Shown one piece after another: positions 4,801 through 37,800 of a DNA stretch of 64,000 nt. A program made the translations under genes and the position numbers. The notes beneath the pieces were generated by a model. The model did no database searches. It saw only the letters and a program-made list of their open reading frames with translations, and was not told the DNA's origin. How positions within the stretch are numbered: position 1 is the first letter of the stretch; every line of letters begins with the position of its first letter. This stretch comes from Lytechinus pictus (lineage: Eukaryota): positions 15,686,001 to 15,750,000 of the forward strand of contig NC_087260.1 in assembly GCF_037042905.1 (NCBI RefSeq), in the 5' to 3' direction.

Positions 4801-7800
4801 ACATAAATGGGTACTGGCAGGAAGTAATCCCTTAAAAAGCTGTGGGCACCAGAATCGTTAGACTAGACTAGTCGGGGTAATATAGGACCCTCTGGAGCAC
4901 CTAACAAGGTGGATAAGTACAAATACACTACATTAAAATTTAAATGTTGCATCATTATATATCATTATTATTATTACTATTATCATTATTTTATCATTAT
5001 CATCATTATTATTATTATTATTTATCATCATTATCCACAGATTGGTGAGAGGGGTATCAACCTGAGCGGGGGCCAGAAGCAGAGGATCAGTCTGGCCAGA
5101 GTGCTCTATTCCAACCGAGACATCTACTTGCTGGATGATCCCTTGAGTGCCGTAGATGCCCACGTCGGACAGCATATATTCACACACTGCATCAAGGACG
5201 CCATGAAAGGAAAGACAACGCTCTTCGTCACGCATCAGTTACAGGTGAGATCATTGATTTTTTATTGATTGAATCTATGAAATACATGGACACTGTACAG
5301 TTGTTTGCAATATTTGAATAGTAAGTACTATAATATCTTGGAAAGAGTATGAAATAGTATACAATTAATGCACGTAAGCGCGTACATGCAAGGCCAAATA
5401 ATGAATGATGTGCGAGAAGAGCTAGTGGATATACCGCACCGAGGTCTGCAGGACCGAGTGCGGTATATCCATCTTGCGAGTCGAGCACAGAGTTCATTAT
5501 TTAGGTCCTCTATGCAAAAGAACGCGTGCATTGTTTGTTTAAAACAACTCCCCCATGCTACTGAGTTACCCCAAATGCTGTATATTCTAGATCTAGAATT
5601 TAGTGCAGACCTCGCACTATCCTGCACTCTGACGTCAGAGTGCAGGATAGTGCATTCGGTATGACGTCAGAGTGCAGGATAGTACATTTGGTATGACGTC
5701 AGAGTGTAGGATAGTGCATTTTGGATGCCATAGCGCAATTCGCTGAATATCATGTGATCTGATTTGGACTAATCAGATTACAGAACATTCTTGGGTGTTG
5801 TATAATATGAACTATCATCATCATCAACTTCCTCATATCTTATCAATTGATTAAGGCCTCATCAAAACGGCTGACGAACGATACCTAATGGTTAAAGAAA
5901 CAGGAGCGTACATTTCTTTGACTTCCCTTCGTTGATTTATACATTAATTGTGATAGCATGTTATAAAATTTGGGCATATTCTAATTAAATCCTTGTTCAT
6001 CAAATGTGTGAAGAAAATTGTGATTGAGCTACATGTATGGTATAAACAGTGTCTACAGATACATGGAGCAGTAAAATTTGAGTTCCTGCAAGAAGTTTTT
6101 GGCACATTTTTTTTCATTTGTAAATACAAACGCTAGGATGCTATTTGAAATCATTTCTACATGTACATCATTATCACACACAAAAAAATTAATGATATCA
6201 ATAATAACAATGACAAGAAAATATTTCTTTGGTATGGTACAAATTTCTACAAAAGCTTTCATTCATTTTTAAAAAACATACATATCAAATCATTACCTGA
6301 AGATAATTATTCCATTGCACTGAAACTACTGTATAATTAAGTCCAAAGTCGTGAATATCGACACAAATTCGAGTCAACTTTGCATTTAAGTAAAACCTAC
6401 AGAACTAACAAAATACATATGTATATGAAATATAAATGGTCTTTATCATTTGTTTTACTTGAAATACGTTTCGAGTTAAATGCAATAATTATATACTTTC
6501 TGGATATAGTGTTACACTGTAAGCATACATATTCTGAGTTGAAATTACAGAGTCAAGCCAAATGCTAAGTCCTTATTCAAATTTGCATTTTAAATAAGGA
6601 TAAATCCAGATCCTTCAGGGGTTTTTTTCTGGACAGTAACTGAAGCTTAAAGAATATTAACAGTAATTTATTAAATTTAGACTCAAAATATCTTGGTTCG
6701 ATACACATGTAAAATCACATGTCCAAGGTCATTTGGGATTCCCTTGATAATTTACATAGAATATCAAGGCAATTCTGACTAGAGAACCATTAGAGTCACC
6801 ATATACAGGGCTAGACATTAGCAGTGGCCCGAGGCAACCAAAAATGAGAGTTGGGCCACCAAAGTGCTCATGAATTGTAATGTTTTGTATTATTTTAGGG
6901 CCACCAAGGAAAAAAAATTAGTGTGGAGCCTTGCCATATACACACACAACAAACAAAAATTTATTGTACGGCTAATTTTTATGATTGATTTGAATTATTT
7001 AAAGAATAAATCATACATCAAATATGCAATCAATAACTGATTTTTTTTATCACAGGGTATAGATGTTTGATTTGATAGCAATTTCAGTACGGTACTGAAA
7101 GTATTGCAGATATTTGTGTTGGAATAAATTTAAGAATTCAAGCAACAGCTTTATTGACCACTATAAAAGCATGAACTCCGAGTATTATTACTAAAGTATC
7201 CTTTTTGAACAACACAATACACATAAAACCCATGCAGCTGCAATTTATCCGTCATTAACAAACCATCTATACTTGAATATAAAAAAATGATAAACAAAAC
7301 TGGGATTTACTTTGCAACTCCAGCAATTCATCTGATTCGGATTTTGAAAAAGTCGATGTATTTATAGCCATCGCGTTCAAAAAGCAATCCTAGATACTCG
7401 TGATCAATTTGAGCCAGACTGGAATACTCACTTGGTCCCTCGTAGAGCTGTACCGCACCGGGCCACGTCTGGCCGGAATCGAAACTCCACTGCAAGGTCA
7501 TGTTAACGCGCGAATCCGCGTTGTAGGGATGCGACAGGAAGAGCGTGCCATTCAGTAGGGCAAGTGACCCAAAGACGGATGGATCGACCAACGATTCCTG
7601 TATTATGAGGTTCGGGATAGGAAAAGAGTAGCCACCGTCGTAACTAATCGATTGCATTCGGCAATGGCAGTGGAACTTGTTCTCGTTGCGAATACTTACA
7701 AAGATGGTTCCATTTGTGAGTTCAATAACCTGGAAGATAAAGGAAAAAAATTCTTCAAACTTTGAACTTTTATCACAGACTATGGGAGAGGGTTACCCTC

Positions 7801-34800: not shown

Positions 34801-37800
34801 CAGAATTCAAACAAATCCGTCTCTCTGTGCTTTACAGTGAGTTGGAGAATACTGAAGGTTACATAGATGTAATTAGTCTATTACCATGACAATCGTGACA
34901 AAGGGACTCTTAATAGTTCAGCAAAATATGCATAGAAGAACCAGAGGTGTGTTTCTCAATATAATTTTTCACTGAAAGTGTGATATATATATCCAAAATG
35001 AAATTAAATGAACTTGCTTGCCTTGGTTGTGCATTAAACAAATAATGAATTCCAAGTAACTAAGTCATTGCTCTTTGACTAATAATTTTCAAATTTTGCT
35101 CTAGTAAATAGTATTTTATTAAGTTTTTCAGGAAAGCATACATGTGAACTATTAATTAAAAGATTTCAATTGGATGAGATCCTTGGGTAAATATGCAATA
35201 TTATATATATTGCATATTTACCCTTCAAAGATTTCATCAAATTTTAATTTTTTTTACTAGTTCACATCATGATTACATTGTACATGTATTCTCAATTTCT
35301 TTCTTTAAATTCTCTTTCCAGTATCTCAAAGACTGCGATCATATACTTCTCATGAAAGATGGGTATATAAGTGAAACAGGCACACATGATGAACTACTGG
35401 GTCTGAACGGAGAGTATGCAAGACTAATCCAGACCTACCATCCAGTGGAAGATGAGGAGAAGGAAGATACTCTGATAGAAGATGGAGAGAAGGGTGAAAT
35501 GAAGCAAGCCCCGCCCACCGGGGAGGAAGATGGAAAGAACAATAGCTTATCCACTCAAGATGAAAAGAACACAGGAGGTAAGTATTGCTCAATGGATGTC
35601 ATCACCGCAGCAATTGTGTCCTTTTGCAAGGCATTTATTTACATTTTGTCACTCTCCACCCAGGGGTAGTAAATGGGAACATGGTAGAAAGAAATTCCTT
35701 GAATGATCCTGTGCTTGATGAGGGTAGCCATACTGAATATGGCACTTTCATTTACTTGGTATTTTGATAATATGAAAAGACAGCTGGTAGTGGCAGGAGA
35801 CATGAGATGGAGATGAAGGAGGAGGAAAGGAAAAGAAGATGGACAACTTGGAAGAGACAAGAGGAGTAAGAGTGGGAATGGAAAAAAATAATGAGGAAAG
35901 GAAAGAGAAGAAGAAGAACAAAGGAGGTTGGATGATTCGTAAAACTTCATTAACCCACGAGTTAGTGATGTGTTCTTGAGCATACAAGATTTCCCTTGAC
36001 GTTTCTAAAATGTGAGACTGAATTTCAGTGCTCCTAAATATTGACCTTCAAAATAATCTACACCCTGTTAATTTTCCTTGCCTTTTAATGAATATGTCTT
36101 AATTTAAAACCTGTTGATTTGAATTACATTTTTCTTTTATTTTCCTACCTTATTTCTACAGGTAAGCTGATAAAGGAAGAGGAAATGGAGTCGGGAATAG
36201 TTTCAATGGCAACGTACAAATCCTACGTCCACTATGCTGGCGGCTGGTTCAGGGTCATAGTAGCGGGACTCTCTCTTGTCCTAGCCAATTCATTTCTGGT
36301 GGCTACCAACGCATGGTTGGCAATTTGGTTGAGGTCAGCAGATCTGGTAAGATATATCCAACAAGACAAATATTCCATTTTAATGCTTGTACATATATTT
36401 AAATAATAGGTCTGAATGGGGTATTGTTTCGGGTTTGCATGAAATGTTAAAGTCCCACATGGAATCATTGTTTGCTGCCTTTGCTGGTTTACCTGTTAAA
36501 AGTCTCAATTTCATTCTAAGAATGTAATTTTTTAGTTCGGGAAGCTTTTAGGGGGAAGTCACGCCGGTTATGGTACATGTAGTTAAAGTTAACTTTTTCT
36601 TAGTTCTGAGTTGAATCAATTTTAAAATGGGTGTTTGATCAATAAATCAAGCGCCGGTGCAGATTTTGAAAAATCGTTGCATCGATTTTTTAAAAAATAC
36701 AGTAAAGTGTGATGAAAACAATATGGCGTTTTTGTTTAGCACACAAACTAGACACTTCTTGTCTACCTACTACTAATACTTGGATTACATTTCCCCCAAA
36801 TTCATTGAAACCTGTTTCCAAAACTTCTCAGAACCTGCTTATTCGCCATTAATTTGAAGTTTGTTTCGATCCCAGGTCGAGTCTTGATCGTCGGCCCATG
36901 CTGAGATGATTTATGCATGAGCATGATTGAATTATATTCATGAATGGAAACCATCGTCATCAATCAGGCATGCTAGCTGTTTGTATCTTCCGATCAGATG
37001 CTGAAAAAGTTCAATAAAAAAAAAATTATGACAGGATCAAAGTATCATAAATGTTGCTTACAACAACTATGATGACCATAGTGTGACATGTATATAGCTG
37101 TTGGATGGATCTTTGCTTTATACTTTCAACCAGCATAAATGAGGCAAAGCAATACAGGATATACAAATAACATACAAGATTTATTGAAGATGACGACTAC
37201 TTGATGCTGAATAAATGATAACACGGGAGTATTTAAGTCTAATGGGAATGGCACTAATGGACGATTGATCAGAAATCTGCCTTTAACAGATTCAAATTTA
37301 TAGAGAAGTCTGCACTGGGTGAACCATCGACAGCAACACGTATGAAAGTGGCATCTGCATGGCTTGTCCGTGCAAGCTTTATCACAGACTCTTGTGTTCC
37401 ACCTGAAGATCTTCCGTGCCTGGAATTCTGAATGACTCGAGGGTTGCATGGACACATGCATCCCCGTTGACCACTTCATTCATTCTTTCATCTTTGACAA
37501 TGTTCATTGAGCGCTTAAAAGCATACATCAAAGCGAATCCCTCCTCTAGTTTTTAGGCGCACTGCCCGATCTGTCGCCAATATGTGAGAGCATCTTCTGC
37601 TCCCCAGTTGACCACCAAATTGATGTCTTCGATATCCACTCCAAGTCCTAGGGCCAGAGTGGTGACTACCATTCTAGTACAACTCCCTCTTATACGAAAA
37701 TTGTCTATGATATCAGATGATCTGTCATGTGAAATATTGCTGTGGAACATATCCAGAGCTCGATGCTGTGCTGGATAATGGCATCGTAGATCAGCAACTT

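What the first reader, a model, noticed from the sequence alone, without database searches (positions are those of the whole stretch)
5245..35321. A whole four-gene cluster (3 sialidases + TMEM60) nested in one intron that splits NBD1 of an ABCC5-like exporter
Seen: the exon ending ...VTHQLQ|GT (5244) and the exon AG|[14 protein letters not shown] (35322) join in phase 0 into the canonical ABCC NBD1 sequence. The 30,077-bp gap is about ten times any other intron here and holds three intact antisense NEU1-type genes and an intact TMEM60. Both host halves keep all ATPase motifs. Established: nested genes are usually single and antisense, so a nested tandem enzyme family plus a conserved membrane-protein gene is uncommon. 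Inference: host transcription runs antisense through all three sialidases, so expression may be mutually exclusive or co-regulated. A glycan-remodelling plus organic-anion-export module is conceivable but unproven.
Basis: partly seen in the sequence, partly recalled or inferred. Interest (0 to 1): 0.8.

Follow-up and report, generated by a model that had tools for sequence, protein, structure and literature searches.

The report
Four genes nested in ABCC5 intron
In the sea urchin Lytechinus pictus, one 30-kb intron of an ABCC5-type transporter gene holds three working sialidase genes and a TMEM60 gene; this layout is shared with distant sea urchins, is real, and is a rare example of a known kind of gene arrangement.

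Summary
The exon ending at 5244 (…VTHQLQ|GT) and the exon starting at 35322 (AG|YLKDCDH…) are neighbouring phase-0 exons of one ABCC5-like gene. The L. variegatus 1470-aa orthologue maps in order across both. The 30,077-bp intron is about 10 times the next largest intron in the window (3,089 bp).

The intron holds three intact three-exon NEU1-like sialidase genes on the minus strand (378, 384 and 377 aa; dN/dS 0.08–0.14) and a one-exon TMEM60 gene on the plus strand (dN = 0).

The same four-gene nest sits in the same intron in L. variegatus and Diadema antillarum. The A, B and C copies are positional orthologues, so the nest predates that deep echinoid split. Public annotations of those two genomes already show it. 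RefSeq for L. pictus instead splits the host into 756-aa and 708-aa models exactly at this intron.

RNA contigs from two studies use the 5244 donor, and read depth behind it is about zero. This favours one spliced gene, but the letters of the partner exon were not shown to me.

Host and sialidase A are transcribed from opposite strands in the same libraries. Clusters nested in one intron are known from insects (TipE, GMC oxidoreductases). Verdict: a new member of a known kind, of moderate to low interest. The scan has other notes on this same stretch.

The parts
1816..5244 (+). 5' part of the ABCC5-like host gene inside the window. Exons: 1816-1968, 2311-2418, 3106-3414, 4296-4565 (Walker A, Q-loop) and 5041-5244 (signature, Walker B, H-loop; ends VTHQLQ|GT). 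About 400 N-terminal residues lie upstream of the window.
   Evidence: tblastn of L. variegatus P0194 residues 402-749; splice-site refinement; RNA contig X1 record 1 joins 3104-3412, 4294-4565 and 5041-5244.
5245..35321 (+). The 30,077-bp phase-0 host intron (GT…AG) that carries the four nested genes.
   Evidence: The orthologous intron is about 26.5 kb in L. variegatus and about 45.9 kb in D. antillarum.
7328..10824 (-). Sialidase A, 378 aa. Coding exons: 10824-10185, 9604-9510 and 7729-7328.
   Evidence: Gene model: 369/378 residues identical to L. variegatus copy 1. dN/dS is 0.082. Stranded reads and 1.4-1.7-kb RNA contigs cover the last exon and 3' UTR.
17109..20591 (-). Sialidase B, 384 aa. 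Coding exons: 20591-19943, 19494-19400 and 17519-17109.
   Evidence: 368/384 residues identical to L. variegatus copy 2; dN/dS 0.136; sialidase motifs kept.
26953..29791 (-). Sialidase C, 377 aa. Coding exons: 29791-29161, 28342-28245 and 27357-26953.
   Evidence: 363/377 residues identical; dN/dS 0.126; best solved relative is Sialidase-1, 8du5 (E 6.6e-41 and 1.1e-21).
29827..31800 (.). A roughly 1.97-kb insertion in the head-to-head spacer between sialidase C and TMEM60, absent from L. variegatus. It carries two 100% identical 465-bp direct repeats (29839-30303 and 31304-31768).
32767..33156 (+). TMEM60-like gene: a single coding exon of 129 aa on the same strand as the host.
   Evidence: Pfam Tmemb_185A at 47.9 bits against a cut-off of 23.1. 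The protein is 100% identical to the L. variegatus protein and 74-75% identical to Diadema. dN = 0 and dS = 0.093.
35322..50372 (+). 3' part of the host gene: end of NBD1, linker, TMD2 and NBD2. Exons: 35322-35577, 36162-36346, 39203-39406, 39973-40102, 40434-40716, 41240-41414 (donor uncertain), 41988-42080, 43301-43490, 44101-44260, 47350-47428, 48476-48589, 49601-49765 and 50262-50372 (includes the stop).
   Evidence: P0194 residues 749-1470 map in order; junctions refined. RefSeq P0195 (708 aa) starts at MKDG inside exon 35322.

Best explanation
The feature is one ABCC5-type full transporter gene of about 1,467 aa. Its pre-mRNA is transcribed across a 30-kb phase-0 intron that lies between the H-loop and the last strands of NBD1, and is spliced from 5244 to 35322. 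Inside that intron sit four independent genes under purifying selection, each presumably with its own promoter. Three are antisense NEU1-like sialidases, which form a sea-urchin (echinoid) paralogue clade distinct from canonical NEU1. The fourth is a sense-strand TMEM60, arranged head-to-head with sialidase C. The nest was already present in the common ancestor of Lytechinus and Diadema. It has probably persisted because any rearrangement inside the intron would break the host gene. The RefSeq split of the L. pictus host into 756-aa and 708-aa models is most likely an annotation error. What is shown: the gene models, collinearity, synteny, selection, use of the donor, and opposite-strand transcription of host and sialidase A. 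What is inferred: that the donor's partner is 35322, that the nested genes have their own promoters, and the reason for persistence.
For: The L. variegatus 1470-aa protein maps in order onto both sides of the gap, and its own sequence reads …[13 protein letters not shown]…. The same intron holds three sialidases plus TMEM60 in L. variegatus and D. antillarum, annotated there as one host gene. In D. setosum, a sialidase, TMEM60 and the YLKDCDH exon follow in the same order. RNA contigs from two studies (X1 record 1, 1952 nt; X15 record 9, 233 nt) cover 5041-5244 and then run 29 nt further on letters that do not match the intron behind the donor (5245 onward). Sense-strand depth in 5200-5399 is only what the 45 exonic bases give. 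The nine nested sialidases form one clade (98/96) with A, B and C positional orthologues; the canonical NEU1 on another chromosome falls outside it. dN/dS is 0.08-0.14, and TMEM60 has dN = 0. The sialidase motifs are kept in all nine copies. The host's best solved relative is ABCC5 (1064 bits) ahead of ABCC4 (771 bits).
Against: I never saw the letters of the 29-nt overhang, so the 5244^35322 junction itself is inferred. RefSeq (Gnomon) for L. pictus chose two models: a 756-aa model that ends by reading into the intron (…[13 protein letters not shown]) and a 708-aa model that starts at an internal Met. In study P7 the runs hold 0.54-0.75 of the words of 34700-36346, although only 0.27 of that stretch is exonic. 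Some transcripts may therefore enter exon 35322 from nearby intronic DNA.
Confidence: 0.85

Rival explanations
1. Besides the full-length mRNA, an internal promoter in the big intron downstream of TMEM60 makes a 3'-half transcript. That transcript would encode the 708-aa TMD2-NBD2 product that RefSeq annotates. This can coexist with the best explanation.
For: RefSeq lists three mRNA variants for the same 708-aa protein. P7 runs hold 0.54-0.75 of the words around exon 35322, against an exonic share of 0.27, whereas they hold only the exonic share (0.34) around exons 3106-5244. Both RNA contigs stop exactly 29 nt past the 5244 junction; in my reading, that is what a k=31 assembly graph does where a second path enters the same exon.
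Against: The extra words could equally be the retained 584-bp intron 35578-36161 or nascent RNA. P1 runs hold only 0.25, the exonic share. No start site was seen. My reading of where the contigs stop is indirect.
Confidence: 0.3
2. In L. pictus the host has truly split into two genes, as RefSeq shows: a 756-aa 5' half that ends in the intron, and a separate 708-aa 3' half, with no full-length mRNA.
For: RefSeq models P0044 and P0195.
Against: The 5244 donor is used and depth behind it is about zero, so the read-through end of the 756-aa model has no support in four runs. A 756-aa product would lack the last part of NBD1. Both halves remain about 92-100% identical to L. variegatus over most exons (79% over the linker exon, which starts at 35322) and stay in register.
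Confidence: 0.06
3. The nest is kept because host and guests form a functional or co-regulated unit, either through transcriptional interference or as a glycan/organic-anion module.
For: The arrangement, gene order and orientation are conserved between Lytechinus and Diadema. Nested genes can interfere with host transcription (PMC3192792, abstract seen).
Against: Host and sialidase A are both expressed in the same bulk libraries. In the best-studied analogue, the TipE cluster, expression of the nested genes does not follow the host's (PMC3240667). Sea star and hemichordate NEU1-like arrays show no ABC exon or TMEM60 within 10 kb on either side. No biochemical link between the gene products is known to me.
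Confidence: 0.1
4. The assembly wrongly joins two ABCC paralogue fragments across the interval.
For: None found.
Against: The window has no N runs. The order and content are the same in independent assemblies of L. variegatus, D. antillarum (twice) and D. setosum.
Confidence: 0.01

Closest known systems
[quoted passage not shown]
   Same: Several paralogous genes, plus an unrelated extra gene in Drosophila, lie inside one intron of an unrelated host. The arrangement is kept across a whole animal class, and copy number changes in place.
   Different: The phylum and the gene families differ. Here the guests are secretory-pathway glycosidases and the host is an ABC transporter. Three guests are antisense and one is sense. 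Escape from nesting has not been seen here, but only three genera were examined.
GMC oxidoreductase cluster in a large intron of flotillin-2 in insects (Iida et al. 2007, as cited in PMC3240667)
   Same: A tandem enzyme family is confined to one host intron and conserved among orders.
   Different: I did not read that paper myself; the comparison rests on its description.
Human NF1 intron 27b with EVI2A, EVI2B and OMG (from my own knowledge, not checked here)
   Same: Three antisense genes lie inside one intron of a large host gene.
   Different: Those guests are unrelated to each other rather than forming a tandem family, and none is on the sense strand.
Vertebrate ABCC5 (solved structures 8wi3, 8kci)
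   Same: It is the best solved match over nearly the whole length (1064 bits). It has two TMDs and two NBDs and a similar length.
   Different: Orthology among the many sea-urchin ABCC5-like paralogues was not resolved, and the substrates are unknown.
Lysosomal sialidase NEU1 (8du5)
   Same: It is the best solved match. The FRIP-type motif, Asp boxes, and the Arg, Tyr and Glu motifs are all kept.
   Different: The nested trio is a separate echinoid clade with three coding exons. The canonical NEU1 orthologue, with at least five exons, lies on another chromosome.

Membership tests
Nested (intronic) gene cluster | Every guest gene lies wholly inside one intron of the host. | tested here: met
   The guests span 7328-33156 and the intron spans 5245-35321.
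Nested (intronic) gene cluster | The host exons on both sides are joined in one mRNA. | tested here: inconclusive
   The 5244 donor is used and there is no read-through. Orthologue proteins are collinear. The partner letters were not displayed, and RefSeq for L. pictus splits the gene.
Nested (intronic) gene cluster | The guests are transcribed independently. | tested here: met
   For sialidase A only: reads come from the strand opposite to the host's, with their own 1.4-1.7-kb RNA contigs. B, C and TMEM60 were not tested with reads.
ABCC5-type (short MRP) full transporter | A TMD-NBD-TMD-NBD layout with intact Walker A, signature, Walker B and H-loop motifs in both NBDs. | tested here: met
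   Pfam families on the orthologue; motifs read in the exon translations.
ABCC5-type (short MRP) full transporter | Closer to ABCC5 than to other ABCC members. | tested here: met
   ABCC5 scores 1064 bits, ABCC4 771 bits and ABCC2 or ABCC1 697 bits or less. Named relatives are ABCC5 or ABCC12. ABCC5 and ABCC12 are not told apart here.
ABCC5-type (short MRP) full transporter | Export of cyclic nucleotides or organic anions. | not testable with these tools
GH33 exo-sialidase, NEU1 type | An (F/Y)R(I/T)P motif, Asp boxes, an arginine triad, a nucleophile Tyr and catalytic Glu/Asp. | tested here: met
   All these motifs are present in all nine urchin copies. My mapping of the motifs to NEU1 catalytic residues is from memory.
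GH33 exo-sialidase, NEU1 type | Being the one-to-one orthologue of vertebrate NEU1. | tested here: not met
   The canonical NEU1-like gene lies on G000:C15 and falls outside the nested clade, which has 98/96 support.
TMEM60 (Pfam PF10269, Tmemb_185A) | A Pfam match above the gathering score, with similar size. | tested here: met
   The match scores 47.9 bits against a cut-off of 23.1. The protein is 129 aa, against 131-132 aa for the two insect proteins that NCBI names TMEM60, which are 35-43% identical.

The most novel reading that the evidence does not exclude
The giant intron may act as a regulatory hub. An internal promoter next to TMEM60 would produce a separate TMD2-NBD2 half-transporter. 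Host read-through across the three antisense sialidases and across the sense TMEM60 poly(A) site would tune all five genes. On this reading the nest has been kept for function, not merely because it is hard to break.
Probability: 0.1. Interest if true: 0.55.

Novelty: new member of a known kind. Interest (0 to 1): 0.3.

Why it matters
This is a clean deuterostome example of a multi-gene nest. It combines a tandem enzyme family with an unrelated sense-strand gene, and it is stable across a deep echinoid split. That makes it useful for studying how nests arise, expand in place (three copies in Lytechinus, four in Diadema) and resist break-up. The practical result is an annotation point: RefSeq models XP_063967093.1 (756 aa) and XP_063967439.1 (708 aa) of L. 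pictus look like two halves of one ABCC5-like gene. This matters because L. pictus is being built into a genetic model in which ABC transporters are studied (PMC9245184, title and abstract seen). The work also shows that sea urchins carry an extra NEU1-derived sialidase subfamily, and all copies found lie in this one intron.

Tried and rejected
1. I searched for a transcript-derived protein fragment spanning VTHQLQ|YLKDCDH in L. pictus, using P0044 region 620-749. Only full-length relatives from other species came back, with no junction-spanning fragment.

2. The first sialidase homology search missed the close orthologues, because the 211-aa query excluded proteins of 377 aa or more under the length rule. 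I rebuilt the orthologue proteins from loci L004 and L005 instead.

3. The sea-cucumber ABCC5-like protein P0228 has no gene record. The brittle-star P0257 gene range was too long for DNA to be returned, and its listing shows no sialidase or TMEM60. The origin of the nest outside echinoids therefore stays open.

4. I first took the second D. antillarum host (P0047), with four nested sialidases, as an old co-duplication of host plus nest. I rejected that reading because the two hosts are 98.7% identical and TMEM60 is present in both. It is a haplotig or a very recent duplicate.

5. An assembly artefact is rejected.

6. Read laying could cover only one end of the intron because of the 6-kb limit. 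The loose end at 5244 was not among the rows printed.

7. The look-up of sequencing runs was busy twice before it answered.
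Full report
**What is in the sequence.** The window has no N runs. It comes from Lytechinus pictus: its TMEM60 protein is 100% identical to a protein on a 31.7-Mb L. variegatus chromosome, but the DNA is only about 82-89% identical to that genome. The exact 756-aa and 708-aa proteins encoded here carry L. 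pictus RefSeq names.

Exon 5041-5244 encodes the ABC signature, Walker B and H-loop. It ends …VTHQLQ and is followed by GTGAGA. Exon 35322 onward starts [14 protein letters not shown] and is preceded by TTCCAG. Both boundaries are phase 0, and the gap is 30,077 bp.

**The host gene.** The 1470-aa 'multidrug resistance-associated protein 5-like' of L. variegatus (P0194) maps in order onto the window. Residues 402-749 fall on 1816-5244 and residues 749-1470 fall on 35319-50369. Its own sequence reads …[13 protein letters not shown]….

Splice-site refinement gives 18 exons in the window. The introns measure 342, 687, 881, 475, 30,077, 584, 2,856, 566, 331, 523, 573, 1,220, 610, 3,089, 1,047, 1,011 and 496 bp. 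The big intron is therefore about 10 times the next largest.

Both NBDs keep their ATPase motifs. The best solved relative is ABCC5 (1064 bits), ahead of ABCC4 (771 bits).

**The guests.** There are three minus-strand genes, each with three GT-AG coding exons:
- A: 378 aa, 10824-7328.
- B: 384 aa, 20591-17109.
- C: 377 aa, 29791-26953.

Each has exactly the length of its L. variegatus orthologue and is 96-98% identical to it. dN/dS is 0.082, 0.136 and 0.126, at dS of about 0.135.

Their best solved relative is Sialidase-1, 8du5. The (F/Y)R(I/T)P motif, Asp boxes, and Arg, Tyr and Glu motifs are present in all copies. My mapping of these motifs to NEU1 catalytic residues is from memory.

TMEM60 (32767-33156, plus strand, 129 aa) passes the Pfam gathering score for PF10269. 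It has dN = 0 against L. variegatus. No other long ORF of note lies in the intron, only transposon fragments.

**Is it one host gene in L. pictus?** RefSeq says no. P0044 (XP_063967093.1, 756 aa) ends …[13 protein letters not shown], which reads into the intron. P0195 (XP_063967439.1 and two more accessions with the same protein, 708 aa) begins at MKDGYISE inside exon 35322.

I laid two stranded ribo-depleted RNA runs and two sets of RNA contigs on 3000-8999. Contig X1 record 1 (1952 nt) joins 3104-3412, 4294-4565 and 5041-5244, then carries 29 more letters that do not match the intron behind the donor. Contig X15 record 9, from another study, covers 5041-5244 plus 29 such letters.

Sense-strand depth in the 5200-5399 bin is 0.31-0.45. 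That is what the 45 exonic bases give at the exon depth of 1.7-1.9, and no more. So the donor is used, and the read-through that the 756-aa model needs is not seen.

The printed tables did not include the 29 letters, so the partner exon is inferred from homology rather than read. A search for a transcript-derived protein fragment across the junction found none.

Around exon 35322, runs of study P1 hold 0.25 of the sampled words, against an exonic share of 0.27. Runs of study P7 hold 0.54-0.75, although the same study holds only the exonic share around exons 3106-5244. This, and the fact that both contigs stop exactly 29 nt past the junction, leaves room for extra transcripts that enter exon 35322 from nearby. 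I rate that at about 0.3. It can coexist with the full-length mRNA.

**Expression of host and guest.** In both stranded runs, the host exons are covered only by pairs whose first mate lies on the minus strand. The last exon and 3' UTR of sialidase A (6800-7799) are covered only by pairs whose first mate lies on the plus strand. Depth there is 5-9, against 2-4 for the host. The two genes are thus transcribed from opposite strands in the same samples. At bulk level their expression is not mutually exclusive.

**Conservation.**
- In L. variegatus, one annotated 1470-aa ABC gene spans three antisense BNR_2 genes (378, 384 and 377 aa) and TMEM60. The intron after residue 749 is about 26.5 kb.
- In Diadema antillarum, the 1476-aa host (P0199) spans sialidases of 372, 377 and 374 aa and TMEM60. 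They lie in the intron after …VTHQLQ, here about 45.9 kb. A fourth, A-like copy is unannotated at L004:45493-47630.
- D. setosum shows a sialidase, TMEM60 and the YLKDCDH exon in the same order.
- A tree places the nine annotated nested copies (the extra A-like Diadema copy was not included) in one clade (98/96), with A (100/100), B (81/82) and C (100/98) as positional orthologues.

The triplication and the nesting therefore predate the Lytechinus-Diadema split. From my own knowledge of echinoid phylogeny, that split is on the order of 200-250 million years old; I did not test this.

**Where the sialidase family sits.** A six-frame search of the L. pictus genome finds exon-1 homologues only in this intron, plus one locus on contig C15. 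That locus is a gene of at least five exons, 43-60% identical to fish NEU1 exon by exon (most exons 55-60%). It is the canonical NEU1 and falls outside the nested clade.

Sea star (A. planci) and hemichordate (Glandiceps) NEU1-like genes form tandem arrays. They show no ABC exon or TMEM60 within 10 kb on either side.

**A second D. antillarum locus.** This locus (P0047, L008) has four nested sialidases and TMEM60. Its host protein is 98.7% identical to the first host, so it is a haplotig or a very recent duplicate, not an old co-duplication.

**Comparison with what is known.** No paper in the library mentions this nest. The kind is known, however. [quoted passage not shown] The GMC oxidoreductase cluster lies in a flotillin-2 intron. 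In the TipE case, expression of the guests does not follow the host, and nests are said to be gained more easily than lost (PMC3240667). Nested genes can cause intron retention and cryptic polyadenylation in hosts (PMC3192792, abstract seen).

The sense-strand TMEM60, with AATAAA or ATTAAA signals at 33530-34033, is the guest most likely to compete with host elongation. That is inference.

**Verdict.** It is not supported for mutual exclusion of expression, and the functional module is untested. This is a new member of a known kind, already visible in the public annotations of two related genomes. Its main practical value is the likely mis-split of the L. pictus ABCC5-like gene. The scan's other notes on this stretch (s1-324995 and s1-324946) agree with what I found.

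Noticed in passing
window 29827-31800: A roughly 1.97-kb insertion with two 100% identical 465-bp direct repeats lies 36 bp upstream of the sialidase C start codon, in the head-to-head spacer with TMEM60 (its first repeat starts 48 bp upstream). L. variegatus lacks it: its spacer aligns to 29700-29826 and to 31801-32800. The insertion looks recent and may touch a shared promoter.
   Followed up: partly
window 46533-46759: A 76%-identical partial copy of the intron-exon boundary of host exon 47350 lies inside the 3,089-bp intron. It is a decoy '[10 protein letters not shown]' exon that runs into non-homologous sequence.
   Followed up: partly
G000:C15:6190300-6197100 (loci L009/L010), minus strand: This is the canonical NEU1-like gene of L. 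pictus. It has at least five coding exons, is 43-60% identical to fish NEU1 exon by exon (most exons 55-60%), and falls outside the nested clade.
   Followed up: partly
L004 and L008 (D. antillarum contig JBFRCO010000158.1, about 600 kb apart): Two near-identical copies of the whole host-plus-nest locus are present; the host proteins are 98.7% identical. L008 has four annotated sialidases. L004 has three, plus an unannotated A-like copy whose exon-1 match is shorter. This is a haplotig or a very recent segmental duplication.
   Followed up: partly
L005:5494-6690 (L. variegatus), minus strand: A 398-aa sulfotransferase gene is annotated antisense inside the 5' end of the same host gene. That region lies upstream of my window in L. 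pictus.
   Followed up: no
window 3600-3999, 5600-5799 and 8000-8399: These short stretches have very deep RNA coverage on both strands and many loose ends. They are probably copies of expressed repeats rather than local transcription.
   Followed up: no
window 57382-57876, minus strand: A 164-aa open frame with a coiled-coil-like Q/L-rich stretch lies downstream of the host gene. It may be an exon of the next gene.
   Followed up: no
window 21098-21493, plus strand: A 131-aa ORF lies between sialidases B and C and looks like a fragment of a retroelement protein.
   Followed up: no
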